DNA of 64,000 nucleotides from Takakia lepidozioides (lineage: Eukaryota; Plantae; Bryophyta): assembly GCA_030704615.1 (NCBI GenBank), contig CM060731.1, forward strand, positions 29,388,001 to 29,452,000, given 5' to 3'. This document shows, piece after piece, positions 24,977-61,058 of the stretch. Every line of letters begins with the position of its first letter. The first letter of the stretch is position 1. Made by a program: the position numbers and the translations under genes. The notes under the pieces were generated by a model. It searched no databases. It had not been told where the DNA came from and saw only the letters and a program-made list of their open reading frames with translations.

Positions 24977-26563
24977 TTCCTGTGCGGTATCGCTTGAGAC
25001 CACTCAGCTGTCTGCTTGGATATGAGGACTTCCGGTAGGGTTCGAGCTGCTGTGCAACTTGAGAATCAGGGGGTGGGGAGGACAGAGAGGGTGGCCGTGA
25101 CAGCATGCGCACGCTCATGGTGCAACATGCGAGGATGAATCGCACCAATTCTTCCACGACCAGATCCCAAGGGCAAGACGACAAATGCCAAGCTTTGGCA
25201 AACAAGAGAGCAGGGAAGAAGAAACAGCGACGGGCTTTCATCGGTTTTCACCGAGCACAGACGGGTAAGACGATGGAAGACCGGCTTCCATGGGGCTTTG
25301 CTCTTTGAAGCCAACGGCCCCTAAATCCGACAAAAGTACCGTCAAATTTAATAACGCTAAGAACTTTTGGGCTTTTTTCCCTGGAAGGAAACTTGTGAAT
25401 CCACCGTCCAAGGCTGTCACAGTCACAATGATCAGAATCCTATAATCTACACGCCTGCCTAGCCAATGCATTACAACAGTTTCCTGTGTGCTCTTCACTC
25501 ACGATAAGCCTCCTCGTGTGTCGGCCTCGCCCTACCTACACTCGTGGTGGGGCTCATTTCGGTAATCCCCTCTTACCCTACACATATAGAGGGTAGATTG
25601 GAGTTTTTCCTCTCACTGTAGTTAAGGGGCCTACCAATTTACGAGCAAGTTTATCTTTTTCAAAACATAAAATAAAAATATCATTGAGTTATCTAAGTTT
25701 TCTAGAATTTCTAATTCACGTTGTGAGGTTTGAACCCAGTATCTCATGCAGGACAAATGTAAAAGAGGGGCCCTGGCGGCCCCACTAGTCCCTGCAGAGG
25801 TTCCGCCAGGTTAATGATGCCAAAGGCCCACCAACAGCTTTTATTACTACATAACCGGTTTTTCGAAGCATCTCGAGTACGTGTCTACTAACTATTCGCT
25901 CACTGGACGAGGCGGCTGGTTACAGGGGTAACCTGCGATCCTCACAAGATTTGATAACCTGGCTGCGCATGGATGTAAAGTATCGATAGTATCGATAACC
26001 GGGCTGCGCATGGATGAACTGTCGGTCTCGATGTTTCGAAAACCCGGGGTTGTCCGGCCACGGTTTACCCATGCAGCGTCGGCGCTCAACCCGTGGCCTC
26101 TCGCCGGTCACCTAGTCCATTCCGGTCACCACTGTCCAGGGAATAGTGAGAGGAGATAATAACCTCTTTCGCAGTAACCTCGCCATAAAGGCGTCCAGGG
26201 GACCGCCCATGGGAAGGGGCAGAAGAACATACCACACCCGTCAGGTAGCAGGATTTGACCCCAGAATCATCTCAGTGCACTACCCAACTGAGCTACTGAC
26301 TGTAGGTAGGTAATTTTTCCTTTTTTGTCTTTTAAATGAAAGGGGACAGAGGCGGGCCCGTTACAGGGAACTGTTATGGACAGGTGTTTTCCTTTCCGGA
26401 AGAAAAGAAAAGGAAAGGGGCTTGGGCATTTAGGGTTAAGCATAGGCGAGATACGGAGTAGGTTTGTGGTTTGGAGGGAGAAAGAGAGGGGAGATGCGAG
26501 GGCTGCAATTGTAAGTAGCGTGCGATTTGGAAGTGTTTGATGCGCCAGGCGGCTAGTCAGACA

Positions 26564-28077
26564 ATGCACAGCTCCAGCCACACTGCCTACATGTTGGAGA
26601 GAAAGCTTCTTCGAGCATCTGCAACGGGCCGGCTGTCTCGTGTGTTACGTGTTCTTGAAAAGTATGGGAAGATTCATGCGAGGAGGAAAAGGAAAACGGC
26701 AACAAGGTCTACGGAATCTTCAGATGACAGCAGAGAGCAGGTCGGTAGTTTTTCTAACAGGACTGGGGTTTGCCAGAGTTGTAATAATGCCCGGGCTAGT
26801 CATGCTTCTCCTAGTAGTGATTTCGGTCCTTGCGACTGTTTCTTCCAGAGCAATAATGGAAGAGGTCTGAAGGTGGATCGCAAAAAGTCAAGTTCCAGTA
26901 TCCGAAAGAAACCTGTCAAAGACGACATTAGGAAGGCATCAAGCATGATTAACATCAATTGCATGGACTCAGAAGGTTTAACTCCTCTTCATTACGCCTG
27001 CCTCTCAAGATCATTTGAATTGGTTGAGTTTCTCATTTCAGAAGGGGCAGATCCTAGGGTTGAAGATGGGAAGGGCAACACTCCTTTACATATTGCGGCA
27101 AAATTGGGGTCCACTGTTATCATATCGGCTTTGAGAGACGCAGGAGGTGACATGGAGGCCGTTAACGATGAGAAGGCCACACCATTTAGTTTTGTCTTTG
27201 CAAGACTAGAGACTTTGAGGGAGAAACAGGAAGCAACTCCTAACTGTTCAAAGTTTGCTGAGCCAGAAAACTGGGGGTCTCGTCTTGTAAAGGAATTGAG
27301 TGATGGAGAAGATAATTGGTGGGGAGGGGAGTGGGAAGAACCTTCTTATGAGAGGGATTTTGAAGATCGCTGTTGGCGAAGAGGCTCCATCAAGAGTAAA
27401 TCAAAGGATAGGCTGGAAGGGGGTCTGTTTAAAGAGAGAGATGAGAGGAGGAAACAACTTCTGGAGGAGAGGGCAAGGGAGTCCAGGAGAATTCTGGAAG
27501 CGGAAGAAGCAAAGGACAGGGTCTGGAGGAAACAGGTGCTGCAGAAGAAAAATTCTGGACAACACAAGCTTTATGGGCAGTCATGGAACAAGTTCTCTCA
27601 TTCTTGTAATTTGTGCCTCTCCTATCGGGATGTGCCTTTTCCGGTAGAGAAAGGAGAAGAAGGAGATCTCCCAAGGGTTCTTTTGCATGGAGTCCCTCCA
27701 ACTGAGCAGAAGACATTGTTGAGGAAAGAATTGCTTCGGTGGCATCCAGGTGTGTTCCTTCTTCATGGTTTTTTGGAGAGAATTCTATTTCTGATTGAAA
27801 GTCTTTTTATGGTTGTCACATCTCTTTTTGCTGAGCTACTTGGATTTTAGGTCATGGATGCTTGTAAGCGTGTGAGATAAGTGGAGAAGAAGAGGTTAAA
27901 AAAGAGAGAGATCATGCTCAATAACAATGTCCGCATTGCTTGTCCACAGATAAATTTTTGCAGAAGTGGGGAACGAGGTTACAAGGTCCTGATCACGAGC
28001 GCATATTAGGACGAGTTAATGAAATATCACAAGCTCTCCATCAGCTTTATAGCAGCCTGGTTCCTAGAGAGGTGTAA
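26564..28077 (+). CDS. Ankyrin-repeat protein with C-terminal RWHPDKF domain (NFKBIL1/IkBL-like)
   Basis: Exon 1 (26564-27749) has ankyrin repeats (GLTPLHYAC, GNTPLHIAA), a charged coiled region and LSYRDVPFP...LRKELLRWHP. Exon 2 (27950-28077) continues DKFLQKWGTRL...RILGRVNEISQAL*. The architecture matches NFKBIL1-family proteins as recalled. Confidence 0.8.
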
Positions 28078-32796: not shown

Positions 32797-35700
32797 ATGT
32801 TCTTGTACAGCCTCACCCTGCAGCAGGCGACAGGGATAGTCTGTGCCACTTATGGAAATTTCACAGGGGGCAAAGCGCAGGAGATTGTAGTGGGTCGGGG
32901 GAAAGTGCTGGACCTTCTTCGGCCCGATGACAATGGCAAGCTGCAAACCCTACTTTCGGTTGAAATCTTTGGAGCCATTCGCTCCCTGGCTCAGTTCCGT
33001 CTCACTGGATCTCAAAAGGATTACATCGTGGTTGGCTCAGATTCCGGCCGCATAGTGATTTTGGAATACAATCGAGAGAAAAACATATTTGAGAAAATCC
33101 ATCAGGAGACTTTCGGGAAGTCTGGATGCCGGCGTATTGTGCCTGGCCAGTACTTAGCTGTTGATCCCAAAGGGCGTGCGGTCTTGATTGGGGCGTGCGA
33201 GAAACAAAAGCTGGTGTATGTGCTCAATCGTGACAACGCAGCCAGGCTCACTATCTCCTCGCCACTGGAAGCCCATAAATCACATACAATTGTGTATTCG
33301 ATCACTGGGGTCGACTGCGGTTTTGACAACCCTATTTTTGCAGCGATAGAGCTGGACTACTCCGAGGCTGATCAGGACTCCACGGGTGCAGCAGCAAACG
33401 ATGCACAGAAACATCTGACTTTCTATGAGCTTGATTTGGGTCTCAACCATGTTGTCCGGAAGTGGACTGAGGCCATTGATAATGGTGCTAATATGCTGGT
33501 TACGGTACCAGGGGGAGGTGATGGGCCAAGTGGGGTCCTTGTTTGTGCAGAAAATTTTGTAATTTACAAGAATCAGAACCAACCTGACGTACGAGCACTT
33601 ATTCCCCGAAGGCAAGACTTGCCACCCAACAGGGGAGTGTTGATTGTTTCAGCAGCTACCCACAAGCAGAAGGGCCTGTTTTTTTTCCTGCTGCAGACGG
33701 AATATGGTGACATCTTTAAAGTGACCTTGGATTATGACAAAGATGACCAAGTAACAGAGCTTAAAATCAAATACTTTGATACCATTCCTGTTACGTCGGC
33801 CATGTGTGTTCTCAAATCTGGCTTCCTATTTGCTGCTTCAGAGTTTGGCAACCACTCTCTGTACCAGTTTCAAGGAATAGGTGATGACCCCGAAGTGGAA
33901 TCCTCATCGGCGACGTTGATGGAGACGGATCAGGGGTTTCCACCCATTTTCTTCCAACCCCGAAAACTCAAGAATCTTGTACAAATTGACGAGATTGAGA
34001 GCCTTATGCCCATCTTGGACATGAAAGTGGCCAATCTCTTTGAGGAAGAAACACCCCAAATATTTGCACTCTGTGGGAGAGGGCCACGGTCATCACTTCG
34101 CATTTTACGGCCTGGTCTTGCAGTTACGGAAATGGCAGTTTCCCAGCTTCCTGGAGTGCCAAGTGCAGTCTGGACAGTCAAGAAGAATGTGAATGATGAG
34201 TTTGATGCCTACATTGTTGTCTCATTTGTGAATGCAACCCTGGTCCTGTCTATTGGTGAGACTGTAGAGGAGGTAAGTGACAGCGGTTTTTTGGACACCA
34301 CCCCATCGCTGGCAGTGTCTCTCTTAGGGGATGACTCTTTGATGCAAGTCCATCCAAATGGCATACGGCATATAAGAGCTGATGGGCGTATCAATGAATG
34401 GAAAACACCAGGCAAAAAGACAATTGTGAAGGTTGGCTGCAACAGGATGCAGGTTGTGATTGCCCTTAGTGGGGGAGAGCTGATCTACTTTGAGATGGAT
34501 GTTACTGGACAGCTGATGGAAATTGAAAAGAGAGAAATGGCAGGTGATGTTGCATGTCTTGACATTGCACCAGTACCAGAAGGGAGGCAACGCTCACGGT
34601 TCTTGGCCGTGGGATCGTATGACAGCACTATACGTGTTCTGTCTCTGGACCCTGATGATTGCATGCAGATCCTTAGTGTGCAGGCTGTTTCATCCCCTCC
34701 AGAATCTCTCTTGCTGCTCGAGGTTCAAGCATCAAGTGGAGGTGAAGACGGGGCGGATCACCCAGCTAGTGTGTTTCTCAATGCTGGTTTGCAAAATGGT
34801 GTTCTTCTAAGAACAGAGGTAGATATGGTGACTGGCCAGTTATCCGACACACGGACACGGTTTTTGGGATTGAGAGCTCCGAAGCTATTTTCTGCTCTGG
34901 TTAGAGGTCGTAGGGCCATGCTTTGTCTTTCTAGTAGGCCTTGGCTGGGCTACATCCATCAGGGCCATTTTCTCTTGACGCCACTTTCATATGAAACCTT
35001 GGAGTATGCAGCTTCCTTTTCTTCAGATCAGTGTGCAGAAGGTGTGGTAGCAGTTGCAAGGGAGGCACTGAGGGTTTTCACCATTGAGAGACTGGGTGAG
35101 ACATTCAACCAGACGGTCATGCCCCTTCGGTACACCCCCCGCAAGTTCATTCTTCACCCTAAGCAAAAGTCTCTCATTATTCTTGAGAGTGACCAGGGCG
35201 CATTCACAACAGAAGAGCGAGAGGCCAACAAAAAGGATGCACTCGAAGCTGCAGGTGAGTGTTATGTTTAACTTCTGCCATCAGAAGGTCATAGGGAGTA
35301 TCATTGCCAGACGGCACACAACTATTCTCAGGTGTATTCTCAATCTTTGTTAAGATTGTCATCCACCATCATTAAGTGTGTGCACCCATTGACAATTGCC
35401 TGCTGCAACTCTATCCCCCAGGAGAGAAAGAGGCCTGTCAAGTCATCTTGTTGTATTCTGTAATTTGGCATCAACTGATCGCAGTGATTAGCACCTGCAC
35501 AGATTGATTCGTATGAGACTTGCAGGCGGGGGGGAGGACTAAATTCTTTGATTAATGATTTGATATGATTTTCTGGCACCCGAACCTCTAGAAACGGTTC
35601 CGTACGATTCATGTATGAGGTTTATTAAGGTTTATCTTCTTAAGAACCAAAGGCATGGAGCAGGTGCTCAGGAAAATGGCAAGATGGAGACAGAGAATCA

Positions 35701-37967
35701 GGAGAATGGAGAAGGAGACGAGAAGGAGGACCCCCTCCCTGATCAGCAGTATGGGTACCCCAAAGCTGAACCAAGCAAGTGGGCATCATGTATACGAGTT
35801 TTGGATCCAAAGTCTGCAACAACAACTTGTCTGCTGGAGCTGCAAGATAACGAAGCAGCGCTAAGCATTTGCACTGTCAATTTTCACGACAACAAGGAGT
35901 TGGGGACTGTCATAGCTATTGGCACTGCCAAGGACTTGCAATTCATGCCCAAGAAACAGTCAACAGGAGGATTCATACATATCTATAGGTTTGTGGATGA
36001 GGGAAAGGGACTTGAGCTCGTGCATAAGACCCCTGTCGATGGAGTGCCAACAGCCTTGTGCCAGTTCCAAGGACGCCTGCTTGTTGGAGTGGGGCAGGTG
36101 CTCAGGATCTATGACTTGGGAAAGAGGAAGCTGTTGCGAAAATGCGAGAACAAGAACTTCCCCAACACAATCATAGCCATTCATACATATGGGGACAGGA
36201 TATACGTTGGTGACATTCAAGAGGTACTTTATGTATGCTCTGCCTGTGGTCATTTATGCACTAACAATGGAGGTTAACCTTTAAGTGTGACTGAACCTGC
36301 AAGTGACATATCAAGCCATTTGCTTGCAGGCATTGCTACTGATTCAGGGGTGTGTGGGTTCTTCCTCTAAGTTGGGGAGCAGGTCGGGTTCCCATCACTG
36401 GGTTCGTGAGCGTGTGTTTGAGAGAGAAAGAGAGACATTGTGTACCAAAAACCTTTGCTTGTTGTAGCCTTGCAACCATAGCCCATTTGCTTGAACCGGA
36501 GAAGAGGAGAGCACAATGAGGTCCACTTCATTCAGACAGCCCTATCTTTGTTTGAATGGGAGCTGCCCAGGAGAATTAACTCGAAGTAGTTTAGAAGAGT
36601 GGAGGAGGGGGGGGGTGTGTATGTGTAAGGAGAGAGAGAGAGCAAGAAGGCCCGAGCAACCATTGGCAACAACCTACTCTGTTTAGTGCATTAGCTGATG
36701 AGGATCTAGTTTCTAAATATTTCTTTCTGTCAGTGCAGTCTTTCCACTATGTAAAATATCGGCGGGACGAGAACCAGCTGTACACTTTTGCAGATGACAG
36801 CTGTCCCAGGTGGTTAACTGCCTCCCTACACATGGATTTTGACACCATGGCTGGAGCAGACAAATTTGGTAATGTCTACTTCATGCGACTACCTCAGGAT
36901 GTCTCTGAAGAGATAGAAGATGATCCAACAGGAGGCAAGATTAAGTGGGAACAGGGCCGTCTGAATGGTGCACCAAACAAGGTTGAGGAAATCATTCAGT
37001 TCCATGTAGGTGAGGTCATCACAAGCCTGCAGAAGGCGTCGCTGATTCCCGGGGGAGGAGAGTGTGTACTTTATGGCACTGTGATGGGGAGTGTGGGAGC
37101 CTTGTTGCCATTTTCATCCCGGGAAGATGTGGACTTCTTTTCACACCTTGAGATGCATTTGAGACAAGAAAATCCACCCTTGTGTGGCCGAGATCACATG
37201 GGTTATAGATCTTCCTACTTCCCAGTGAAGGTATGTACTCTTGGGTTTGTGTATGGTGCTCATATTTTACAGGTGAGATTTGCCAACATAAACCTGACTT
37301 GGATGTGTCTGTTTGGAAGATTCGACTTCTCGAACTCAGAGCATAATTCAGTAGGTTCGACTAGAGAAGCTACTCATCCCAACCTCATGAGCACCCTAAT
37401 TAACCTAATACATAGTCCACGTGTAAGGCCGAAGCTGAAGGGAGAAATAAACCAGAAGCATCTAGAGTCAGAGGCATGTGGTCAATGAGACACCTCTCTC
37501 CATCACTCCAAAAGTTTGGGGCACTTGACCTGCAGTCTTACAAGGTCTCAATAGTCATAGCTCAAGAACCTGCAGGTTCTCAGTCCAGGTGGAGGGACAC
37601 TCGTAGGACCTCTACCCAGAGGTAACCACGGTGAAGAGTAAGAAATTGAGGGGAAAGTAAAGGAGGCGCTTGGACTTCCACCAAGTGCGTCTCAACAAAG
37701 TGAAATGATTTGCTCAAGAAAGGACTTCGGACCTGATCGATTCAGAATTCCAGCAGCTTAACTTTGTCACAATTCTGTTGCTTCCTTGGTGATGTGAAGC
37801 TGATGTAAGGTTCCTTGTGTCTGTCGCAGGATGTCGTTGATGGAGATTTGTGTGAGCAGTACCCAACTCTCACTTCAGAGTTGCAAAGAAAAATTGCAGA
37901 TGAACTTGATCGCACCCCTGGCGAGATCCTCAAGAAGCTTGAAGACATCAGGAATCGGATTGTCTGA
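32797..37967 (+). CDS. SF3B3: Splicing factor 3B subunit 3 (SAP130/Rse1)
   Basis: Exons 32797-35254, 35664-36223, 36739-37230 and 37830-37967. Highly conserved sequence from MFLYSLTLQQATGI and HQETFGKSGCRRIVPGQYLA to RTPGEILKKLEDIRNRIV*. Confidence 0.98.
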
Positions 37968-48058: not shown

Positions 48059-48552
48059 CTATAGTGATTATCGGCGATGATAACTCCGATTTCGTGCTCC
48101 CCGGCGAACAACATTCCGAGCAACGTACTCCCCTTTCCGCCACGAGACACGGTGTCAAAACATGCAGAATGGGTGCCGAAATATCCGTAATGTCTTCGTG
48201 TGCGTGTTTCCGCCCTAGATGAGATCTGGATGGATGACATTCATCGATCAGAAGTCCTGCAAAGTAAACTCCACGTTACGTGGATTTGAACTTAGGACCT
48301 GCCGTGGCAACTGGGGAAGTTGGGTTTGTTGGGAATTCAACGACGAGAGAGACGGAGGAGATGAGGGAGCTCGTGCATGAAATTAGGGTTACAACGTTAG
48401 AACGATTGTGTGTTGAGATTGAATACGGACTTCAGTGTGGATGGTGAGGATGTGTTGGCAGTTGGTTCATGAAGACGTTATGAGGTTGGAGCCTGGTCGT
48501 GATCTATGAGAGACAGAACGAGTGGAGCAGTTTGGTATCTGTAGTATTTGCC

Positions 48553-51500
48553 ATGAAGACATTTGAGATGGAGGAGGGAAAGGTCCGAGGGTACGGCGCG
48601 CCGCGCAGTGGTGTGTTGAAAAAGAGGAGGGTGCAGAGGCCTGCGAAGCCACGAGTTGCCAAAGGTTCCACCAAACCCTAATTTTTATCTTGGTCAATTG
48701 TGAACTATATGGTCTGTGTTCGGTATTTCTGCATTGTTCAGGTCTGATTGAAGTTACTGCCTTCATTTTTGGTACTGTTTGCAGTGGATGATTCAGCCAC
48801 GGAGTCGGAAGGGGACGGCTTGTGGCATGGATTTCGTGGTCCTCCTCCGGATTATTTCAAAAGTGGGAAGCGGGAGGCTCGTGGTAAAGGTGTTCTGAAG
48901 AGGAGGTCTCTAGCGCCTCGCGAGTTCATACCGAAAGGGATTCTTCGCACTTTCCCCCCCCCTGCCGACCAGGTCGCCGTGATTGAGCAGCATAAAGGTT
49001 AGGGCTCTTCCCACTCCAGTTAATTTGCAAGATGAATAATGCTTGTGTAGGAATCACATCTGTGGCATCAATTTTTATGTACAAGTCACAAAAATTCACT
49101 CGAGGTCCTCGATCCCATTCAATTGGCCACTTTCCCGTGTGTGAATTGCGAAGCTGCATTGGCAAAGACTGTTGCTGGAATCAGCAGTATTAGGGTTGAA
49201 ACCCATGCCCTAATTTTCAGAGTGCAGATAGGAGCTTCTAGGAAGATAATGGCGTTTATCTGGCTATGGTAATTTTGCTGATCTCTTTTGTTAACTAGTG
49301 AGAGTAAACTATCCTTTGCTGGGCTTTGAGAGAGACATACTTTTTTTTCTTGGCAGAAACTGCTCCAGGGGCACTCCAGGTGGTACTCTGAGTGCAGAAT
49401 AGAAAGCTTTTGAACCGCCAGAACGGGAACAATTCTGTACCTTTGCATTGGTATCTATGTTCAGAGAACTGAAGAGTGTCTTCACTTGGGTGAGACCACT
49501 TAAGGATTTATTCGCCATCTACAGGGGCAGCTAGTGGAGCAACCACTGTCAAACATGAGTAGCCAGTGTCAGTGACCTGGATGCATAGCCTTGTAATGTA
49601 CAGCACCTCAAGCTCTTGCATTCGCACCATGAATTTCACTCTCCAAGATGGCTGCCTCAATTTGCTTTAGTACAATGGCAGATGATTTGCTCAAACTTTT
49701 TAAGTTGCAGTGCTAGTTCAGCTAGTTGTGAGCAATTCAGGGCCAAGCTGTCCCTGTTCTTGGTGTTAGTCAGGGCAGTTGACCAAAGTGTGACCAAATA
49801 TATCATGAGTTATGCATTTGGGTTGTGCAACCTGTATCCCTCCTCTGAAGTATCTAGCTTCATTGGGGACGGCCCCCTTACCCACTGACTGCGAAAGCCT
49901 CAAACTTCACATATATTCTACTTTTTCAGGTGAATGTTGAGGGATAGAATCTCTGTCTCTAGGGCATGGCTTGTACATACAATTCATAGCTTGGATTGAC
50001 TGTGATCGTAAGAAATTGCAATAAATTTTAGGTTTACCATTCTGGTTGATGGGTGCGGTGGGTTAGCCATGTACAGTTATAGACAGAAGGAAGGAAATGA
50101 TCAAGGAGCTGACAGCATCATGTCGGAATGAGTGTCAACTATATTGCCGCCAACTTTTGGCTCTTCAACGACAGTGGCAACAGGTTCGTGGCCTCGGTCC
50201 AGTCATGATATTTGTAGCAATTGTACCCCTCTCTCAGCCCCATTATACTGGCTTCGTTTTGTCAGCCTTCCACCAGCCTTTGCACTTCCGTGAGGGCATA
50301 GTTGCTGCCAGGTATCAAACCTCCCAGATCTTGCTCTGGGGCTTCTACCTACCTGAAGGAAACGCAACATGAATTATCATGGATTAGTTCGCCATCAAAT
50401 GTCCTGTTCGTTCACTAGGAACCTTCATGAACAGACCATTCTCCTTTGCTCAATTTGCAATTTCTCAACTCCACAACTGGATTAAGTAATCCCATAGTGG
50501 AGTTGGCCATATGCAAGGATAGAATGTACTCATAAGACGTTGTTTGCCGTAGCCTTGTGGCCATTGACATATGCAAGGATAGATTGTACTCTTAAGACGT
50601 TGTTTGCCGTAGCCTTGTGGCCATTGACCCCGCGCCCAGTTTGAGCGGGAACAAAAGGGACAGAACCTACCTCTGTCAGGGGCTGACGTTGGTAGTGTGA
50701 CTTACCATCATATATAGAATTAATCCGGGTTTTCCAGATATCCTCTAGAAATCCCTTCGCACAAGCATCAATCTGCTGTGTGTGATTTGCCCAAAAACTA
50801 GGCCTCAGGAGGGCCTGGGCTTTTGGCTCAGCCTCGAGACTTTCAAAGTTGTTAAACAGGGGTACAGGCACAATTCCCTTGATAGAATTGAGGAGAGTGT
50901 CTCTGTGGTGAGAGAACCCCGGACAGTGTATCAGAAAGTGAATACTGTCTTCAGATTGCCCACACAGCGGGCAATTGCACTCTCCCTTTCCTCTCTGCTT
51001 CTGTTTGCTGTTCAAAGGTAGGCTTCCTGCCCTGAGTTTAAATTTCAGTCTAGTGCCGAGAGTGGGTAGACCCTTGAGGTCATCCAAGATGTCCTCCCCC
51101 ATGTCACTGACTGGATACAAGTTCAGGGAAGTTTTCTGCCTAACTTCATTTTCATCAGACAATCTCATGGCAAGGATAGAGAGAGAGCCGGAGGGATCAG
51201 GCAATTCTTGAGTGTTGTTACAAAGAATTTAACCACATTCAAGGAAAAGAGAGAGAAATTAAAACGACAAATTGCCAGAATTGGTTTGAGTTTCCATGCT
51301 CTGAAATCTTACTGCGTCTGATTGTGTTCTGGTGATGTGGGCTTGGGCAGGAACTTGAGAGTCCCTATGCACATTTCGTTCCTCTGAAAGCACAAGTTGA
51401 GAATGCTCAAGGAATGCTGATAGGCAAGTGAAAATTCCCATCTCTGGGCAGAGCTTCTGTTGCCTGAGTTAAAGGCTGTCTCCAGCATCTGGTCCCCCTC

Positions 51501-54500
51501 TCCAGCCCATCTCCTTCACTTCACTCTCTGGCCCTCTCTTGCTCTCTCCAATGAAATTGATGCTGTGGTACACTGGTTTCTGGAGGCATTTGGGAGGCAA
51601 CAATCGATATAATATACCAAATTGAGCTCACTGTTGTTGTATTCTTCAGGGGTCATACTGACCCTTATTATGCTCTCTTCTCCTCCCCATTCCGCTATCT
51701 CCTACCCTCTGGACAGGGTCTATGGCCATTTGGTTATGGCAAGCTCAGATTGTGTGTCTCCCTTTGTATTGGCAGCTCCCAGGTGTTTCCCATTTGTGGA
51801 AGTTTAACCAGGGGCCAATGGCATTGCCTCCAGTGTCAAGAAAACCTGACTATGCTGAGATGTGTATGGACCTTACATCCGTTGGTCGAGGTTCACTTGC
51901 TAGCCACAAGCATGCTATTGGACAAAAATGGTTTTGGGAAAGGATTCATTCTAAAACTGTTGTATGAGGTAGTGGAGATGTGGTGTGTATGATACATTAC
52001 TTCGAGCAAGTAGCCCTAAATAATTTGCGCATTTGTAAGAATCATGAAAGTTACAAATGAGCTGGCTGTGAATGTTTATTGCTAATTTTGCAGGAGAAAA
52101 TATGGGCACCAACCCAGGAGTTGCTGGAAAGACTCCCTTACGCAGGCGGGTGGGGTGGCGGGCAAATGAGCGTGAGTCCTTGCGACGAGGTTTGATGATG
52201 TTTGGGTTGGGTCGGTCAGAGAAAGTCCGAAGTATCATGCGTTCAATGCTGAAGCTTTCCCGCCATGGGCTAGGAGACATAGCTGACTGCTGCTGGGAAT
52301 TTGTACGCTGCTGTGGGGACCTCGCTGAGCCCAAAGAGAAAGCCTATGCAGAGGGTTGCTTGCAAATTGCAAAGGAACAGGGTATTGAGTTGGGTAAGCA
52401 ACTTTGGTTACTAATACTGGAGCTGGTTGTAGGTGATCTGGTATATAAAAGTTGTAAATAAATCACAAGTGCTTTCTGTGAACAGGGATGGTTGCATGTG
52501 ATAAGCCAGATGTTTGCACTTAAATCTGTGAGCTGGATAACCTGCTTTAACCAAGCCACAGAATCTCTCAGTCTGTTGTCCGGGTTGTATTCTTGCAGGC
52601 CCGGAAGTAAGTGAGCAGGTGGGACAGTGGGAAAAGATAGAGAAGAATGCCTCCGTCTGGCTGAAGCGGCTCAAGCTCTTGGATACTCTTGGTGATGCGG
52701 TCAGGATCTGTGCAAGCAAGGAGAGCCGTGATACCGCATATAGAGCTATTGATCTGCTCAGGGATGCTAGTGTTCCTACTGACTGGTGGGGGCGGGAGAG
52801 CGACCTGGCATTGCTTGCTGGAGTCTACAAGCACGGGTTTGGCAACTATGAAGGCCTGCGTAAAGATGAACAGTTTGCAGAGGCCTTCAACCCAGCAACT
52901 GCTCGATCCGTAAGTCTTTGTGATTACTTGCAGTTGGCACTAGAGGAAGCTTTTCTGTTTACAACTAGCTAAGTAATGGCTAATGTACACTGTGGATGTC
53001 ATGGGCTGTTGGACACCTATGGTAGTTTGATACCGAGTCACTCAAACTGCAGGGTACAGTCTTGCAGGGTTTATCACCCCACAGCTATGGGATCTGAAGC
53101 TCAAAGAAATTCACCCAGGAGCACATCCTCATATCAATCTGCTGTTTTTTGTCAAGTTGAATTAAGCTATTTGGACTTGGTATTGCTGACCATCAGATGC
53201 CCATGTTGGGTTGCCAGAATCAGGGGGATTAACTATGGTCATGCTTCACAAAACTTCGACGTGTGGGTTTGTATTGTTTGTGAGTAGTGGATCACACAGA
53301 GGAATAAATGATTATAAGAATCGTGGTGAAAGCAAATAAGGAGGAGGTAAACCTTTGAAGTGGATTGCTTAGGCTGAGCTTGACAGTGGGGTGGGTTGTT
53401 TCAAGGCTGAAGAACTGATTGAGGCAGAGGAGGAAGGTCCACATCCTCCGAGCAGGTTTTCCTCTTACACAGACACACACACCATCCCTTATTTCCCTAA
53501 GACTCTCATGCACCTCCACTAGCCAATCCATGTTACATTTTGTGTGTAGGCTAGCTAGTGTAATGCTCAATCTAACTGGGAGCCCATCGAGAGAGCTATA
53601 GATGTTTCATAGATTTCGTTACCAAGTTATATCCTGCAGGGTCATTGACCGTAGCACTGCAGCATCTGTGAAATGAAGTATTGAGGGCATTCAAGGTGTC
53701 CTGACCCCAATCTCATGTTCTCTCTCTTTCTCTTTGTGGGCCAATGTATTTTCTGCTGTCCAAAGAGTATACCTTGTACGCAGTGCTATCTTGGACTGTG
53801 TGATATACCTCCATATGATTGATTGCATTCTGAATTAGGTAAAGCAGAGTTTTGCACTTGGTGACAGTAGCTGTCTCACACGTATTTAAACTTTGCTGAG
53901 TTATTTTGTGGGTTTTGTCATGGTGCAGGGATGGAGCAGTTGAGTGGCCCGAGGCCAATACTCTAACACGCAGGCTGAAGCGCGTGGTGGAACATGTTAG
54001 TCGAGTGGGTCAGCAGGTATACTCTCCCTTGCCCTTATTTTGTGGCTGCATCTATGTATTGTTCAGTGCACAGTTTGGTTAAGACAAGCAGCAAATGAAT
54101 GCTGGTGGACAATCTCAAGTTTTTCACAGCTCATGCCTCATCACATGTGTCAAGCAGGCAGTGTTTCGTAATATTGAGCTCCACACCTCCTATTACAGTA
54201 TTGTAGAGTGTCTCAGGGGATAGGTAACTACTGTGCCCCTACAGCCAGTTCATGTATGTACCAATCAGGAAAACACAGTCCAGAATTCCAATGTGTTCTG
54301 CAGTCCACTCTGATTGAACTGAATTATTCTACTGCAAACACCTGATGTTGTAGAATATCTGCTAATGGTCTCTCCAACTTGGAGGAAATCTTCTTGGTGA
54401 CTTCCAGTGGCAAGGATGGGGTAATGCTGGATTGAGCTAAAAACGTTAGTCTGAAAGAGTAGTTCTGTATACTCAAATCTGTGATTGGGGAGAATTTGCT

Positions 54501-57500
54501 TGTAGAACAGAAATGGATGGTATAATGGTCCCGTTGACAAGGACAACTGTGACTGAGCCAGCCACCTACACATGTTGGTATGTGTATTTCATCCGATGTG
54601 GGGGTTTAATATGGAATATGTGTATTGCAGGTGGGCAAGAAACTAAAGGTGGTTGATATGACACCACGGGCTCGGTCCATGAAATGGAGCAAGAGAGACA
54701 AGCTAGAGTTTCTGAGAAACCTGATGCGATGGGGCCTCCCACTGGTATGTTTGCACCCTTCTTTCCACTCTACCCCTCATGCCAGCCACCTGACAGCAAG
54801 CTCATTACTTACCATAAACAGACAGAAGCTTAGTACTTCTTGAAGAACCCTCTATGGGGATGGGGTCGATGGCTGTTGGAGAAGAGATACGTCTTTGTCC
54901 AATGGGTTGCATGAATGAACCCACACTGGAGGCTGGCAGTAGTTCAGAGTTGGCAAAGCCACTCCTGGATTAAGTTATCATTAAATGTGTACATGTTTCC
55001 TTTCTAAACCAATTGGTCATTTTTGTGTTGTCAGACTCAAGGACGAGGGAAAGTCCGATGGCAAGCCTTGACTGAGCGCTCAAATTTCCCATCAGTGAAG
55101 AAGAGAAGTGAGGCAAGCGTGGAGTCCTGCTACCGTGATGTATATAGAGAGATGAAGGAGCTAGTCGGTGGTCCAGATGTGCCACTGGAGACGGTGAGTG
55201 TAAAACCTAATGCCGAGGTAATTTAAGAGCTACCTCTTGTACCGAACCTTTTGTCCGTTGCACGGCTTTCCTTCTGACCACATTGCCTGCAATTTGATAA
55301 TGGTTCACTATTTAGTGCCGTACTTTTCTTAGGAAGAGATGAGAAAACTCTCTAGATTCCCCGTGCGAACTCTGGTCACTGTAAATTTGGGCACACCCAG
55401 TTCAGGCCAAGTCAAACATGGACTTCTTGAAATTTGTGGTGATCAAAGGGTGCACTTTCCCAAATGGGTGTGATAGGTTCTGCACTTGCCCTGGACTTTC
55501 AGGATCCTCCACCCCAGGTGGGACAACTGAACTTTTTTTCATCTTCTAAATTCAAGAACCTGATTAATAACTTCAGTTGATTCCTCCTTCTCTGGCCTCA
55601 TACAGAAAAAGAAGAAGCCCGTGTCAAAAAAGGGCCCTGTCAATGTGTTTGAACAGTCAGCATTCAACACTAATGTGTCTCAAGAACCAGTTGGACCTCC
55701 CATCCTCAATGATACAAATGCAGTAAGTTCCTTTCTCTGGCCTATGAGCATGTGTTTGTATTAGATCCACGTCCACTGTTAGGAACCAATGGGGTGACTG
55801 GGGAGTTGCAGCAACTTGTCAATACTATGCTGCTAGTCTTGAAAATGTTTTGTGACCATTTTAAGGTTGCCCAATCTGAAAGGGTGTATCACATTGTCTT
55901 TAACTTCTAATACCTTGATTCAGAGATCTGGAACTTCCATCAATAAGACTGCGTCAATGCATGCACACACATTGTACTGTTGTCAAATTGTATCGTGTAA
56001 GTTGGCAGGCCAGGTTGAAAGAGAGGTTGGAGCTGCTGGACACATTGCGGCAGGTGCTTGACTGTGTGCTAGATGAGGAATGGAATACACTAGCATTACA
56101 CCACGGTCATGATATGCCGTCCTGGTGGCAAGCTGGGGTCCATGACCACGCGCTCATTAAGGTGCCCCATCTGTGTAACTGCAGTTTCTCCAATCTGTTC
56201 AGCAGGTTTGCCTGACTCATAATCTGGAGTGAAGCCAATTTCCTACCTACCCACATTCTCTTTCTTAATACTACCTCTGTAAACAGGATACAGTTCAAAC
56301 TTACACAGTACTGGCTACAATGCTGGCAACTTCTTCTGGCTACCACCAGGAAGAGTAGGCATTTTGAGGGAAATTAACAATGGTGAGTGCTAAGACCAAA
56401 TCCAAAGATCTAATCATTTTAACTTCTGTTCGTCTTGGCCATAAATGCAGGGGGTGCTAAAGCATGGGTTTGGATGTTGGGACGACATTTTTGGAGATAG
56501 TAGCCTGGGGTTTCCTGAGGCAATTGGTAAGTTTCACCTGCAACTATTTTTAGGCCAGCAAGGTGAGTGTACTTTCCCTAGAGGTTCTCACAGCTAGACC
56601 CACCACTGCCCTCCCCCTTTCTCTGCCTCCTCTCCCTCTTTGTTTGTCAAGCAAAGGAGGAAGGCAAGACCTCAATTTGAACTTTAGTAAGAATTTTCAC
56701 TTGACACCCCAGCACAAGCCAAAGAGTACATGTCAGAAAGGAAACAAAAGATACCCAAAGCCCTCCTAAGCCCTCAAGTAAACGGGAAACTTATTTAGAA
56801 GCACTATCCACCACCCCCATCATCTAGGCAGGTCAAGCTTCCACATGGAACTTGAAGCACATGTCACCCTCCAGAAACAAACCAGAAACATACCCGCAAT
56901 AGAAATTCTCTCTTTTAGTTCTCTCCCGTCCTCTCTAAGAGCGAGCTCTTTCTTCTTTTTCTTCTTTCATGCTTAAAAGAGAGTAAGCAGTACAGACAAC
57001 TTGAAATAGAATTGGTGTGCTGTAGCTCATGAAATCCTGCAGGCTCCTGCTCGGTTTCGGGGGTCCTTCAGAGCAGGTGGAAAACCACCATAGCCCATAT
57101 CAATCCTGTGGTTTGACAGGTGCAAGTGACATCAATGGAGGAGCTATTCCATCCTTGAAACCACCCCCCAAAGCATGTTTGAAGAGGGTCAAGTTTATAG
57201 GCAATATCCTACGGCGTCAGCTGCGAAAGCAAAAGGTATGCTGTCATCTTGTGCTTGTGGATCTGAGTTTGTAGGTCTTATTTTGATCTAAACGTGTGCA
57301 TCAGCTTTCTTGCATTGATGGCCTCTTAGCATCTGCAATGGTGAAGGACAGATTGTCAACTGGTTAGCTTTGTTCCAGGTAGGTTCTGGATGCTGAAATT
57401 TCAAACTGGGTTGATTGGAAAAGAATGACCTCCACTTTTCCACCAGCGATCCAGAGCTCATTGGTTGGCTGTTTGAACGGTTCACATGCTACAATATCCA

Positions 57501-60500
57501 ACCCTTTCAGCTCCATCATCACCCTCTAACCATGCCAAAGTCTGGGTCATTTGCTCTGTTGTCTGACAATTTGAAGATTTGGGGTTGTGCACCCAGTTCA
57601 GGGTCACCAACCCCAAGCTACCTGCCCTGATCAAATGAGAGGCCGTGCTGCTAGCCTTTTCCAGTTAATGTACAAACCAGGTATTGGGGATCACATTTGA
57701 GGACAACATTTGCTCTGTGCTGAGGCCTGCATCAATTAAGTAGCAAATTCCCCCTCATGGCATCACCAACTACACAGAAGTCCCTTTTTTGGTCACCATT
57801 TCAGGATCTGAGAACAACCAAAGTGGGAAAAGAAGTGGCATAGTGGCAATCACAGCCAGTTGCCTACCTTGTGAGACATAACTTAGTCTACCCAGCTGCA
57901 ATGTTTCCTACATTTCAGCTAGGTAACAGTGATCATTTTGATCTCTATTCATGATGTCAAGATTGATGCAGGTGGTGCAACCACGACGTAAACGGCCAGC
58001 ATCTGATGGGAAAGAAGGAAAGGATGCCAAGGAACTAAAGCGTTCCAAGCATGTTCGAGCTGTTGAGGTTGCAAGGGATGCAGAAAGCAAGCCCATCCTT
58101 CCGATTACCCTGTCGGACCGTCTCTCCCTACTGGATCTGGTAAGTGCAAGCAGTGGGTGAGTCATTACTGGTTTCATTATGGTTGATATTCCCATGGTAA
58201 ATATCTTTGAGTAATCAACCTTGGCTACATCTCAACATTCCAGCATGTTTACTGGGAAATTATACAATGTAAACATATCAACACTTTGCATCTCACTTCC
58301 ACCTACTTGATTGGCTGTCTTTCTTTCCCCTCCACATGTAATCTCTGGTATCATACAATGACAAAATGCTGGTCTCAGCGAGGTATTCGGTATTGGATCA
58401 TATGTCAAGTGGTAGCTGGAAGGTGTGACAGCTAGCTTTTGGATCGGCCATGGTGCTAATGCTTCGTTATTTGCAATAGTTTGAAGGGCCTTAGGGATGA
58501 CTTGTCATGATAGTGAAGGTTTTTGTGCTACTGCCAAGGGACATTGTTGTGAAGTCTACAACATAATTCTTCAAGTGCATGTGTTGATGTGGGGATAACA
58601 GGGAACGGTGGAGCCAGATCGGCCAGGGTTTCACACTGAACGTCATATTTTCCCAGTTGATTTTACAACTGTGCGTGATCATGCTAGCATGGTGGATCCT
58701 AATGAGCAGACTCAATATACGTGCACAATTGTCGATGGGGGTGGTCCTGGGCCACTCTTTCGTGTTACTCCAGATGATGCCCCTGAAATGCAAGTTGAGA
58801 AAGATTCAGCCTCAGGTGCCTGGGTAGTAGTTTGCGCTGCTGTCAATAGAGTGCGAGGCATCGATCGTGAGAAGGTGCCTGTCTCTCCTGTGCATTGTTA
58901 CTTCCAGTACTTGTAACTTGTTTCTGTCACCAGTAGACCTCTCCTTTTGACCTGTGGAGGCTAAAATTTAATGTGAATAAACATGCAGTGGTGGCTTTCA
59001 ATAACCAGGTGGGGATCTCAAATGGAGATGGGGTAAGGAAGAGACCCCTTCCTCCTACACATACCTTGGTGTGGATTTTTCCTCCACTTGCAACTGGGAT
59101 GCGCTTATACAAAAAGTGATTCAATCAGCTAAAAGCAAAGCTTTGGGTCTCACTAAATTTTTCCACTGCAGAGGGATTAACTCTGAAGTTAAAAGGGCCA
59201 TGCATTGCAAGGTTCTTAGGCCTGCTTTGAAGTACACATCTGCCATGTGGGTTGACAACTCCAACCATGTTAACTCTGAATCCATTCAGGTTGGGGTGGT
59301 CAAAGAGATCATGTCAGCGTGGTCTACAACGAGGTTGTTCAGGGCGTGGTTGCTGAATTTGACTTGGAGGCTGTCTAAAGCCATGTCGGTTGCTCAATGA
59401 CTGTCAGATGAAAATGAAGTCAGGCATAAAACTTCACTGAAGTTGTTCCCAATCTGTGACGTGGGTGAGGTTCTCAAGGATGATTTGAAGGGCCTATCTA
59501 CCCTCAGCACTAGATTGAAAATAAAACTCACGGCAAGGGGCCTACCTTTGAACAACTAACAGATGATGAGTGGAGAGGGAGATTGTAAGCACCCGATGTG
59601 TGGGCAGACTGAAGACAATATCCACTCTCTCATACATTGTCCGGGGTTTTCTCACCAGATAGCGACCCTCTTCATCTCCGTCAAGGACATTGTGCTAACT
59701 TTGAAATTCTCGAGGCTGAAACTAAAGCCCCGGCCCTGCCTGTTGGTGTCTACTTGCTGGGCAACTTACACACAGCAGAATTGATGCTTGTGTGAAGGGC
59801 TTTCTAGAGGATATCTGGAAAGCCCGAAAGTAGTGTCTGTTCCCTCTTGTTCTGCCCGCACTGGGCGCAGGTCTAGTATGAGTACAAGGCTAGTATGAGT
59901 ACATTCTCTCTCTACTAGAGGAGATTATGAATTACTTGAATGTTATTCGCAGAACTAGACTGCAATTTAAACTCGGGGCGGGGAGTCTTCCTGTGAACTA
60001 AAACAGATGCACAGAGGAAGGGGAGATATTAAAGGCCCAATGTACAGGGGGCCTGAAGACAATATCCATTTTCTGATACAATGTTCGGGGTATGACCATC
60101 AGAGAGCAACCCTCTTGAGGACCATGAAGACCACAGTACATGCACCTCTGTTCACCAACCTTCAAAATCTCGAGGCTGAGCATAAAGGCCTGGCCCTGTT
60201 GGGGTTTAACTGCTTGATCCTCACAGCAGAATGATGGTTGTGTGAAGGGCTTTTCAGACGAAATCTGGAAAGCCTGAACAGATTGTAGGTAAGTCCCTGT
60301 GCCCAGTTTGGGTGGGAGCAAGAGGGAACAGACACTACCTTTGTGAGGGGCTCACTCTAGTCGTGGGACTATGGCCACAAGTCTATGGCAAACAACGTAT
60401 AATGAGTACATTTTCTGTATGCATATCTGAAGTTTCCACATAACTGGTCCTACCATACCCAGGAGGACAATGGTGTAGAGCTCTATCCTTTGTATACTGG

Positions 60501-61058
60501 CAAAGCATTACACTTGACTGGAACATCCCTCTGTTACAACGTTATACTGGTGTCACATCCATTAGATAGTAGTTGCCTTGTGAAAATCTTTGTTAACCCT
60601 TCTCTGTTGTGTTGCAGGTGACAGTGAGTGGCACAGAGATGTTTGGGCTGTCCCATCCAGAGGTGTGTCGCTTGATCCAGGAGTTACCTGGAGCAGACCT
60701 TTGCAGGAATTTCCGACCTGAACTTTCTTTCTCTCGCTTTGGCCCACAAGCATTGACCAGAGTCATGGGTGAAGATGCAAGTCCTGTGATGCCTCCAGAC
60801 AGCCCTCCAGGTGGAGATGGAGAAAGAGAGTTGGGGCTCTCTGTGGATTTAGAAATGGACGAAGCTGGAAGCGGGAGAGATGACATACCTTTAGCACAGT
60901 GGCATGTCAGACCTCGGGAGGGTAGGGACACAAAGGGAAAGGATGTAGTGCACACTAACACAATGTCCTTCCAGCATCTGCCAGGTACGGCTGTTGATCT
61001 CACGTCAGACGAGGATGAAGATGAATCCGAAGGAGACAGTACAGAGGACGATGAATAG
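48553..61058 (+). CDS. CHD6-9/Kismet-like C-terminal (SANT/SLIDE-like) region fused to FYRN-FYRC; no chromodomain or SNF2 ATPase (~940 aa)
   Basis: Phase-consistent exons: 48553-48664, 48785-48997, 50077-50183, [51717-51732/51738 inferred], 52094-52393, 52599-52909, 53406-53455, 53929-54016, 54631-54744, 55035-55193, 55606-55722, 56009-56161, 56451-56526, 57120-57235, 57972-58139, 58602-58874, 60618-61058. CHD-like motifs: WWGRESDLALLAGVYKHGFGNYE, WPEANTLTRRLKRVV, PSWWQAGVHDHALIKGVLKHGFG. FYRN: GFHTERHIFPVDF. FYRC: SGTEMFGLSHPEVCRLIQELPGA. Confidence 0.85.
50466..51205 (-). mobile_element. 5'-truncated LINE (ORF2 C-terminal zinc-knuckle region plus 3' end), antisense in an intron
   Basis: ORF 50530-51204 has KFKLRAGSLPL...CPLCGQSEDSIHFLIHC (the CCHC motif found downstream of non-LTR RT). 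The 3' end carries a 60-bp tandem duplication (50508-50567, 50568-50627) and a hairpin (50466-50505). Confidence 0.85.
58960..60427 (+). mobile_element. Decayed LINE fragments (two partial copies of the same family as 50466-51205), sense in the last intron
   Basis: 59400-59870 aligns by eye with the reverse complement of 50630-51165. Zinc-knuckle remnants CGQTEDNIHSLIHC and EDNIHFLIQC are present, as is the family 3' tail at 60372-60425; multiple stops and frameshifts. Confidence 0.8.

What the first reader, a model, noticed from the sequence alone, without database searches (positions are those of the whole stretch)
48553..61058. ATPase-less CHD7/Kismet-type chromatin protein fused to FYRN-FYRC: possible split remodeler or adaptor
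Seen: a ~17-exon, ~940-aa open frame. It carries, in order, GWRANERESLRRGLMMFGLGR, WWGRESDLALLAGVYKHGFGNYEGLRKD, WPEANTLTRRLKRVV, KWSKRDKLEFLRNLMRWGL and LKERLELLDTLRQVL..MPSWWQAGVHDHALIKGVLKHG, then FYRN and FYRC and an acidic tail. Established (recalled from memory): these blocks parallel the post-helicase region of subfamily III CHDs (e.g. CHD7 [51 protein letters not shown]), and FYR domains occur in TBRG1/MLL/ATX1/JMJ proteins. Seen: the N-terminus is only ~150 aa and basic, and the ~4.7 kb upstream to the previous (divergent) gene has no chromodomain or SNF2 exons. Inference: this is the DNA/nucleosome-binding half of a subfamily III CHD kept as an independent gene, a lineage I do not know from flowering plants. 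It may pair in trans with a separately encoded ATPase or act as a non-catalytic chromatin adaptor.
Basis: partly seen in the sequence, partly recalled or inferred. Interest (0 to 1): 0.82.

Follow-up and report, generated by a model that had tools for sequence, protein, structure and literature searches.

The report
Stand-alone double SANT-SLIDE plus FYR protein
This is an intact moss gene for a nuclear protein that carries two copies of the DNA-binding module of CHD chromatin remodelers and a TBRG1-type FYR domain but no motor. It belongs to an unstudied family found from green algae to conifers and, so far, not in flowering plants.

Summary
Nine intron positions match the Physcomitrium patens ortholog (67% identity).

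The protein has a basic N-terminus, two tandem SANT-spacer-SLIDE units and a contiguous FYRN-FYRC domain. The two units are paralogous (hhalign E 1e-15). Both resemble the Chd1 DNA-binding domain: VIA Z 15 for unit 2 and 8.7 for unit 1. The FYR domain's closest solved relative is human TBRG1 (profile E 1e-33).

No relative has a chromodomain, SNF2 or BRK domain. Homologs occur in mosses, liverworts, a lycophyte, ferns, gymnosperms, charophytes and chlorophytes. Their first conserved block always lies within about 300 residues of the start, and several come from transcript-sized contigs. So "ATPase-less" is a family trait, not a truncated model. No angiosperm homolog appeared in any search.

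The specific CHD6-9 link is only weakly supported: the second SANT is best hit by Pfam HTH_CHD6-9, mostly below threshold. The "split remodeler" idea has no evidence.

Most likely this is a non-catalytic DNA- or nucleosome-binding adaptor. No paper describes the family, and I found no earlier scan note on it. No RNA evidence for this locus could be obtained.

The parts
48553..48664 (+). Exon 1: start codon and a basic PRSGVLKKRR motif (NLS-like)
   Evidence: First ATG of the open frame. The motif is shared with P. patens P0048 aa 82-100. GT donor after 48664.
48785..48997 (+). Exon 2: acidic DDSATESEGDG motif followed by a basic stretch
   Evidence: The DDSxTESEGE motif is conserved in land-plant orthologs (columns 101-125). 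tblastn HSP to P0048 102-175. AG/GT sites.
50077..50289 (+). Exon 3: conserved helix RRKEMIKEL..CRQLLALQRQW. The donor is uncertain.
   Evidence: tblastn to five orthologs; 73.5% identity to P0048 178-211; alternative donors are listed.
52094..52393 (+). Exon 4: SANT1, the first three-helix domain of unit 1 (RRRVGWRANERESLRRGLMMFGLGR...)
   Evidence: phmmer of this block found only 26 proteins among 1.84e9. Myb_DNA-binding hits occur in some members. AF2 helices 12-25, 30-40 and 48-65.
52599..52932 (+). Exon 5: spacer helix and SLIDE1 (WWGRESDLALLAGVYKHGFGNYE). The donor is uncertain.
   Evidence: Pfam HTH_CHD1_Hrp3 2.2e-8. PDB phmmer best hit is the human CHD1 DNA-binding domain 4b4c. Unit 1 model against 4b4c gives Z 8.7 over 139 residues.
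53929..54016 (+). Exon 6: basic helix WPEANTLTRRLKRVVEH that closes unit 1
   Evidence: W, P, L, T and R columns are invariant in 19 members. It aligns with the KRLKFI helix of unit 2 in hhalign.
54631..55217 (+). Exons 7 (54631-54744) and 8 (55035-55217): SANT2, the part that resembles the CHD6-9 tri-helical domain
   Evidence: Pfam HTH_CHD6-9 hits 13 of 19 orthologs at this position. Junction WGLPL|TQGRG. The model aligns to the SANT of Chd1.
55606..55722 (+). Exon 9: poorly conserved basic linker inside unit 2
   Evidence: tblastn to P0048 615-643. pLDDT is below 50 in the orthologous stretch.
56009..56526 (+). Exons 10 (56009-56161) and 11 (56451-56526): spacer helix and SLIDE2 (MPSWWQAGVHDHALIK|GVLKHGFGCWDDIF)
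   Evidence: Pfam HTH_CHD1_Hrp3 2.1e-4 on exon 11 alone. The junction reproduces the ortholog. Unit 2 against the Chd1 DNA-binding domain gives Z 15.0 over 179 residues.
57120..57235 (+). Exon 12: basic helix KACLKRVKFIGNILRRQLRKQK that closes unit 2
   Evidence: tblastn; hhalign pairs it with the exon 6 helix.
57972..58139 (+). Exon 13: basic linker (PRRKR...) and the first strand of FYRN (PILPITLSDRLSLLDL)
   Evidence: tblastn to P0048 761-803. Junction LLDL|GTVEPD. Similarity to the Mucor TBRG1-like protein starts here.
58602..58874 (+). Exon 14: rest of FYRN and first half of FYRC
   Evidence: Pfam FYRN 2.7e-15 and FYRC 8.9e-7. The only PDB hit is the human TBRG1 FYR domain 2wzo, E 1.8e-13.
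60618..61058 (+). Exon 15: second half of FYRC, acidic tail and stop codon
   Evidence: Pfam FYRC 1.1e-10. Junction REK|VTVSGTEMFGL is identical to P. patens. D+E is 30% of the last 60 aa.

Best explanation
The locus is an intact, conserved moss gene for a non-catalytic nuclear chromatin protein.

Shown: the protein has, in order, (1) a short basic N-terminus with a conserved acidic DDSxTESEGE patch, (2) two tandem paralogous SANT-spacer-SLIDE units, each closed by a conserved basic helix and each resembling the Chd1/CHD-type DNA-binding domain, (3) a contiguous FYRN-FYRC domain of the TBRG1 type, and (4) an acidic tail. It has no chromodomain, no SNF2 motor and no BRK domain, and the same holds for its relatives from chlorophytes to gymnosperms.

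Inferred: the two SANT-SLIDE units bind DNA next to or between nucleosomes without strong sequence preference, as the single unit of Chd1 or ISWI does. The FYR domain acts as a protein-docking surface that brings a partner to that chromatin. The partner could be a transcription factor, as for the FYR of JMJ14, or a chromatin-modifying complex. The protein would then be an adaptor or tether, not an enzyme.
For: Gene reality:
- 15 GT-AG exons with no internal stop.
- Junction peptides match the ortholog.
- At least 9 intron positions coincide with the P. patens gene.
- 67% identity to P0048 over 699 aligned residues.

No ATPase:
- In every long homolog the first conserved block starts at aa 90-300, and Pfam finds only Myb, HTH_CHD1_Hrp3, CHDCT2, HTH_CHD6-9, FYRN and FYRC.
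- Transcript-derived ORFs start after a 5' UTR: Psilotum orf=227-, Pteridium orf=170-, and Picocystis 'type:complete'.
- The gymnosperm-like cluster of P0046 (71% identical to the Taxus protein, unnamed Logan contigs) sits on many 3.5-3.9 kb contigs that encode 937-972 aa.
- The P. patens locus has no called gene in the 10 kb upstream.
- The window has no SNF2 motif.

Fold:
- The family profile hits the yeast Chd1 SANT-SLIDE domain 2xb0 at E 5.4e-10 over profile positions 464-681.
- AF2 (mean pLDDT 75.6) unit 2 against the Chd1 DNA-binding domain gives Z 15.0 and 14.9, with 175-183 residues aligned. Unrelated rows score about 4.
- Unit 1 alone has human CHD1 4b4c as best of 48161 chains (Z 8.7), then yeast Chd1, ISWI and CHD4 SANT-SLIDE.
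- Unit 1 and unit 2 profiles align end to end: hhalign probability 98.6%, E 1.3e-15, 239 columns.

FYR:
- The profile hits TBRG1 2wzo at E 9.9e-34, against 2.8e-9 for KMT2D.
- The window exon hits 2wzo at E 1.8e-13.
- The closest short relatives are TBRG1-like proteins of Mucor.

From papers:
- Chd1 SANT-SLIDE binds DNA and is needed for nucleosome binding (PMC3155300).
- The FYRN-FYRC of JMJ14 is required for its function, and the paper's title says the C-terminal domains bind a pair of NAC transcription factors (PMC4659397, title and abstract).
Against: - No experiment or expression data exists for this locus.
- DNA binding is inferred from fold only.
- The unit 1 match (Z 8.7) lies in the range that helical models can reach by chance. 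Its assignment leans on the hhalign link to unit 2.
- In mouse Niam/TBRG1, the FYR half was dispensable for every binding activity tested (PMC5557939). A docking role for this type of FYR is therefore not established.
- SANT domains often bind histone tails rather than DNA.
Confidence: 0.6

Rival explanations
1. Split remodeler: the protein is the detached DNA-binding or 'ruler' subunit of a separately encoded SNF2 ATPase that lacks its own SANT-SLIDE region, and it works with that ATPase in trans.
For: The SANT-SLIDE fold is otherwise known mainly as the C-terminal part of CHD and ISWI motors. Pfam HTH_CHD6-9 is the best model for SANT2. Mouse Niam/TBRG1, the closest FYR relative, co-purifies with the whole INO80 complex and with B-WICH (PMC5557939).
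Against: No candidate ATPase was identified. None lies in the window or beside the P. patens ortholog. No earlier scan note on a CHD or SNF2 gene in this genome was found. The family has stayed separate from any motor from chlorophytes to gymnosperms, which does not suggest a recent split.
Confidence: 0.12
2. Functional TBRG1/NIAM equivalent: the plant-lineage counterpart of animal and fungal TBRG1, in which SANT-SLIDE units take the place of the animal N-terminal chromatin-association region. It would scaffold MYST-type acetyltransferase or INO80-type complexes.
For: The FYR domain is far closer to TBRG1 than to KMT2 FYR. The short relatives found are Mucor proteins that UniRef names TBRG1. 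Niam binds Myst2 and Tip60 and co-purifies with INO80.
Against: Similarity to the Mucor protein is confined to the FYR domain and about 20 residues before it. In Niam, the partners bind the N-terminal half, which has no counterpart here. The N-terminus of animal TBRG1 could not be compared.
Confidence: 0.12
3. Sequence-specific Myb/SANT-type transcription factor: one or more of the four three-helix domains reads a DNA motif and the FYR domain recruits co-regulators.
For: Myb_DNA-binding (PF00249) hits SANT1 or SANT2 in some members, up to 28.9 bits in P0022. Weak PDB profile hits to telomere-repeat Myb domains occur at profile positions 148-179.
Against: The whole units match the SANT-spacer-SLIDE arrangement of remodelers, not isolated Myb repeats. 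Most Myb hits are below threshold.
Confidence: 0.1
4. Artefact: a truncated model of a larger CHD gene, or a decaying pseudogene.
For: No RNA data could be obtained for this locus. The N-terminus is about 80 aa shorter than in P. patens.
Against: All 15 exons are open with GT-AG sites. Intron positions are conserved. The N-terminal motifs of exons 1 and 2 are shared with orthologs whose models start nearby. Full-length transcripts of relatives encode the same architecture. No SNF2 motif or domain lies upstream.
Confidence: 0.03

Closest known systems
DNA-binding domain (SANT-SLIDE) of Chd1 (PDB 2xb0, 3ted, 5j70; human CHD1 4b4c)
   Same: Same fold and helix order: SANT, spacer helix, SLIDE. 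Detectable by sequence profile (E 5.4e-10) and by structure (Z 15 for unit 2, 8.7 for unit 1). The SLIDE helix motif WW..xDxxLLxGxxKHGxGxW is shared.
   Different: Here the unit is duplicated in tandem. Each copy is closed by a conserved basic helix. The protein has no chromodomains or ATPase, and a FYR domain follows.
Post-helicase region of CHD6-9 / Kismet (CHD subfamily III)
   Same: The order SLIDE followed directly by a SANT is as described for CHD7 (PMC3155300). Pfam HTH_CHD6-9 is the best-scoring family on SANT2 in 13 of 19 members, and one fern protein (P0008) passes the curated cutoff.
   Different: No chromodomains, SNF2 domain or BRK domains. Most PF23078 scores are below threshold. 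No direct alignment with a CHD6-9 sequence could be made here. From established knowledge, not tested here: the CHD6-9 motors are not known in plants.
TBRG1 / NIAM (human FYR structure 2wzo; Mucor TBRG1-like proteins)
   Same: Contiguous FYRN-FYRC of the same subtype: profile E 9.9e-34, window exon E 1.8e-13, and 35% identity over 158 aa to Mucor P0061.
   Different: TBRG1-like proteins are short (281 aa in Mucor; mouse Niam 406 aa per PMC5557939) and lack SANT-SLIDE units. No similarity was found outside the FYR region.
Plant FYR proteins JMJ14-type demethylases and ATX1/2 methyltransferases
   Same: They carry FYRN and FYRC. In JMJ14 these C-terminal domains interact with NAC transcription factors (PMC4659397).
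   Different: Those are enzymes (JmjC or SET) and are present in flowering plants. The FYR here is closer to TBRG1 than to the KMT2 FYR, and no catalytic domain is present.

Membership tests
CHD subfamily III remodelers (CHD6-9/Kismet) | SNF2-family ATPase core | tested here: not met
   No SNF2 Pfam hit in any exon or in 10+ full-length orthologs. No motif I, II or III in a coding context anywhere in the 64 kb.
CHD subfamily III remodelers (CHD6-9/Kismet) | Tandem chromodomains N-terminal to the ATPase | tested here: not met
   No chromo hit in orthologs. The N-terminus before SANT1 is only 90-300 aa.
CHD subfamily III remodelers (CHD6-9/Kismet) | CHD6-9-specific tri-helical (SANT-like) domain, Pfam PF23078 | tested here: inconclusive
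   13 of 19 members hit at E up to 1, best 6.8e-6. P0048 scores 24.3 bits and P0008 28.4 bits against a cutoff of 27. It is split over exons 7 and 8 in the window, so it is not detectable exon by exon.
CHD subfamily III remodelers (CHD6-9/Kismet) | C-terminal BRK domains | tested here: not met
   No BRK hit in any member. FYRN-FYRC occupies the C-terminus.
Chd1/ISWI-type SANT-SLIDE DNA-binding module | SANT, spacer helix and SLIDE fold | tested here: met
   Unit 2: Z 15.0, rmsd 4.8, 179 aligned to 5j70_A; Z 14.1 to 4b4c. Unit 1: Z 8.7 over 139 residues to 4b4c, Z 7.0 to 3ted, Z 6.3 to CHD4 8d4y. The units are linked to each other at hhalign E 1.3e-15.
Chd1/ISWI-type SANT-SLIDE DNA-binding module | Sequence-profile homology to a solved SANT-SLIDE | tested here: met
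   Family profile against 2xb0 and 3ted, E 5.4e-10, covering chain residues 43-265 of 270. Pfam HTH_CHD1_Hrp3 is above cutoff in all 19 unit-1 sequences and hits 18 of 19 unit-2 sequences.
Chd1/ISWI-type SANT-SLIDE DNA-binding module | Binds DNA or linker DNA | not testable with these tools
   Needs EMSA or nucleosome-binding assays.
FYR domain proteins (FYRN + FYRC) | FYRN and FYRC above the Pfam gathering scores, contiguous | tested here: met
   Window exon 14: FYRN 56.2 bits (cutoff 24) and FYRC 29.4 bits (cutoff 21). Exon 15: FYRC 42 bits. The two are adjacent in orthologs, for example P0007 770-829 and 832-905.
TBRG1/NIAM family | TBRG1-subtype FYR domain | tested here: met
   2wzo E 9.9e-34 with the family profile, against 2.8e-9 for KMT2D. 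It is the only PDB hit of the window exon, at 1.8e-13.
TBRG1/NIAM family | Short protein whose N-terminal half carries the ARF, MDM2, Tip60 and Myst2 binding and chromatin association | tested here: inconclusive
   No similarity to the Mucor TBRG1-like P0061 outside FYR. The animal N-terminus was not available for comparison. Architecture and length differ.

The most novel reading that the evidence does not exclude
The family is an ancient stand-alone double SANT-SLIDE 'linker-DNA reader'. Either it is the free-living form of the module that CHD6-9 motors carry in cis, as donor or as remnant, or it still works in trans as the DNA-sensing subunit of a plant or algal SNF2 motor. Its loss in flowering plants would mark a rewiring of nucleosome-spacing control.
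Probability: 0.12. Interest if true: 0.8.

Novelty: new variant of a known kind. Interest (0 to 1): 0.5.

Why it matters
SANT-SLIDE modules are studied almost only as the DNA-sensing tails of CHD and ISWI motors. This family shows that the module also exists duplicated, free of any motor, and fused to a TBRG1-type FYR domain. It has been kept from chlorophyte algae to conifers and was not found in flowering plants, which may explain why Arabidopsis-centred chromatin work never met it.

Orthologs exist in Physcomitrium patens and Marchantia polymorpha, both genetically tractable, so function and partners are directly testable. The result would also bear on what FYR domains of the TBRG1 type do, which is still unclear in animals. 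The work also corrects the reading of the region: it is two whole SANT-SLIDE units, not a string of CHD7-like blocks.

Tried and rejected
Expression and the 5' end at this locus are untested.

2. Direct comparison with CHD6-9 sequences.
- The word-indexed search with the SLIDE1-to-SLIDE2 profile returned only family members. That is a blank that says nothing, because candidates must share exact 5-mers and fall in a length window.
- PDB holds no CHD6-9 SANT-SLIDE chain that the profile could hit.

Exons were searched one by one by reference, and the P. patens ortholog P0048 stood in for folding. The joined CDS was only counted locally for length and stops.

4. A truncated gene or upstream helicase exons: rejected (and the ortholog N-termini).

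5. A pseudogene: rejected.

6. My first guess from the LINE-like ORFs that the window might be animal: rejected. The neighbours are MraY-like, PTEN-C2 formin-like and SF3B3-like genes, and the best ortholog is a moss.

7. Literature searches for FYRN with SANT and plant, with Marchantia and with Physcomitr-, for the FYR domain with TBRG1, and for the Pfam names found no description of this architecture.

8. The Atlas row naming Ciliophora for a FYRN+FYRC+HTH_CHD1 cluster is a lead only and was not followed up.


Full report
**Context**

The window is from a land plant. Its other genes are an MraY-like glycosyltransferase (2.0-3.9 kb, minus strand), a formin-like gene with a PTEN C2 domain and a proline-rich stretch (8.7-11 kb), an ankyrin-repeat gene (26.5-27.9 kb) and an SF3B3/RSE1-type gene (32.8-37.5 kb). 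An earlier scan note on another piece of this genome calls it a moss, most likely Takakia. In line with that, the best ortholog of the target gene is Physcomitrium patens P0048, at 67% identity.

**Observation**

Pfam run exon by exon gives HTH_CHD1_Hrp3 on 52619-52972 and 56445-56597, FYRN plus FYRC on 58608-58916, and FYRC on 60609-61058.

tblastn of orthologs from a lycophyte, a liverwort, a fern, a gymnosperm and a moss lays collinear blocks from 48.8 to 60.9 kb. Fitting donor and acceptor sites against P0048 gives GT-AG junctions that recreate the ortholog's peptide, for example REK|VTVSGTEMFGL, ALIK|GVLKHGFG and LLDL|GTVEPDRPGF.

The chain of 15 exons (48553-48664 ... 60618-61058) is 2901 nt, or 966 aa, with no internal stop and with all sites canonical. 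Junctions E3/E4 and E5/E6 are the least certain. At least nine intron positions coincide with exon ends of the P. patens gene. Exon 1 (PRSGVLKKRR) and exon 2 (DDSATESEGDG) carry motifs shared with orthologs near their N-termini. The 5' end at about 48.55 kb is therefore supported by comparison, although not by RNA from this species.

**No motor**

phmmer of the first conserved block (exon 4) against 1.84 billion representative proteins found only 26 proteins. In all long ones the block starts at residue 90-300. Pfam on these finds Myb, HTH_CHD1_Hrp3, CHDCT2, weak HTH_CHD6-9, FYRN and FYRC. It never finds chromo, SNF2 or BRK.

Members come from these groups:
- Lycophyte: Diphasiastrum.
- Liverworts: Riccia (two species) and Marchantia (two species).
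- Moss: Physcomitrium.
- Ferns: Adiantum, Ceratopteris, Psilotum and Pteridium.
- Gymnosperms: Ginkgo and Taxus, plus a gymnosperm-like Logan cluster (P0046).
- Charophytes: Mesotaenium and Spirogloea.
- Chlorophytes: Monoraphidium, Bryopsis, Ostreobium, Picocystis and Chloropicon.

Several are transcript-derived ORFs that start after a 5' UTR or are flagged complete. The P0046 cluster sits on many contigs of 3.5-3.9 kb that encode 937-972 aa.

The window has no SNF2 signature in any frame, and the long ORFs upstream of the gene have no Pfam domain. The P. patens locus has no called gene in its upstream 10 kb and has unrelated neighbours downstream.

No angiosperm protein appeared in any of the four searches. 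This is decent but not final evidence of loss, because no angiosperm genome was searched.

**Anatomy**

A profile of 12 members hits the yeast Chd1 SANT-SLIDE DNA-binding domain at E 5.4e-10 over nearly the whole crystallised domain. It hits the human TBRG1 FYR domain at E 9.9e-34, far better than KMT2D at 2.8e-9.

AlphaFold2 of P0048:262-760 with 19 aligned relatives (mean pLDDT 75.6) shows two similar helical units. The second unit aligns to the Chd1 DNA-binding domain at Z 15.0 (rmsd 4.8, 179 residues), while unrelated rows score about 4. The first unit, folded alone, has human CHD1 4b4c as its best match among 48161 chains (Z 8.7, 139 residues). It is followed by yeast Chd1, ISWI and CHD4 SANT-SLIDE.

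That Z alone would be modest for a helical model. However, profiles of unit 1 and unit 2 align end to end (hhalign probability 98.6%, E 1.3e-15, 239 columns). The alignment includes the closing basic helices WPxxNxLTRRLKRLV and PxxKxCxKRLKFI.

**The CHD6-9 question**

The SLIDE parts hit the generic CHD model PF23588. SANT2 is best hit by PF23078 (HTH_CHD6-9) in 13 of 19 members, ahead of the Myb model in E-value. Only one protein, P0008, passes the curated cutoff.

Ryan et al. report that the SLIDE of CHD7 is followed directly by a predicted SANT (PMC3155300). That is the same order as SLIDE1 to SANT2 here.

I could not obtain a CHD6-9 sequence through the tools. The profile search for fragments returned only family members, and PDB has no such chain. 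The subfamily III assignment therefore stays a weakly supported lead. The direction of descent (remnant, donor or parallel) is open.

**Function**

Nothing is known experimentally, and no paper in the library describes the architecture. From the parts, the most likely reading is a non-catalytic adaptor.
- The two SANT-SLIDE units would hold DNA at or between nucleosomes.
- The basic N-terminus would give nuclear import.
- The FYR domain would dock a partner, as the FYR-containing C-terminal domains of JMJ14 dock NAC factors (PMC4659397).

There are cautions. In mouse Niam/TBRG1 the FYR half was not needed for the binding activities tested, although the protein co-purifies with Myst2, INO80 and B-WICH (PMC5557939). 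That keeps the split-remodeler and TBRG1-like readings alive at low probability.

**Limits**

- The joined spliced protein was not searched or folded. Exons were searched by reference and P0048 stood in for the fold.
- Atlas rows suggest the same Pfam set in a 237-member cluster whose few labelled members are ciliates and in a chlorophyte cluster. This is a lead for a wider range and was not tested.

**Verdict**

This is a real, ordinary-looking gene of an unstudied and unusual family. "CHD7-type" is only weakly supported, and "split remodeler" is unsupported.

Noticed in passing
window 50530-51204 (-), 59563-59784 (+), 60007-60234 (+): Three related ORF fragments with a CxxC...HxxxxC motif (for example CPLCGQSEDSIHFLIHCPGFSHHRDTLL) lie in introns 3 and 14 of the gene. 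They look like tails of a non-LTR retrotransposon ORF2. The only Pfam sign is zf-RVT at E 0.086. They account for much of the two longest introns.
   Followed up: partly
P0058/P0085 (Chloropicon roscoffensis, 732 aa): A prasinophyte-type relative is annotated by its source as 'chromodomain-helicase-DNA-binding protein', yet it is only about 730 aa. Its representative P0058 has only HTH_CHD1_Hrp3 on record and no FYR. The name is probably transferred from the domain, and this branch may lack the FYR domain.
   Followed up: no
Fold search atlas row 1: A 237-member ESM Atlas cluster of about 921-aa proteins carries FYRN, FYRC and HTH_CHD1_Hrp3, and its few labelled members are Ciliophora. The architecture may therefore exist outside green plants.
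   Followed up: no
window 1-38000: Neighbouring genes confirmed by Pfam: MraY-like Glycos_transf_4 (2012-3875, minus strand), a PTEN_C2 domain followed by a long proline-rich stretch as in class II formins (8730-10979, + strand), ankyrin repeats (26537-27850, + strand), and SF3B3/RSE1-type beta-propellers with a CPSF_A region in unusually long exons (32797-37488, + strand).
   Followed up: partly
window 48553 versus P0048 aa 1-80: The P. patens ortholog has about 80 extra N-terminal residues with two more GVLKKK repeats. The window's open frame has a stop at about 48481-48483, just before 48484. Either this species has a shorter N-terminus or a further 5' exon exists.
   Followed up: partly
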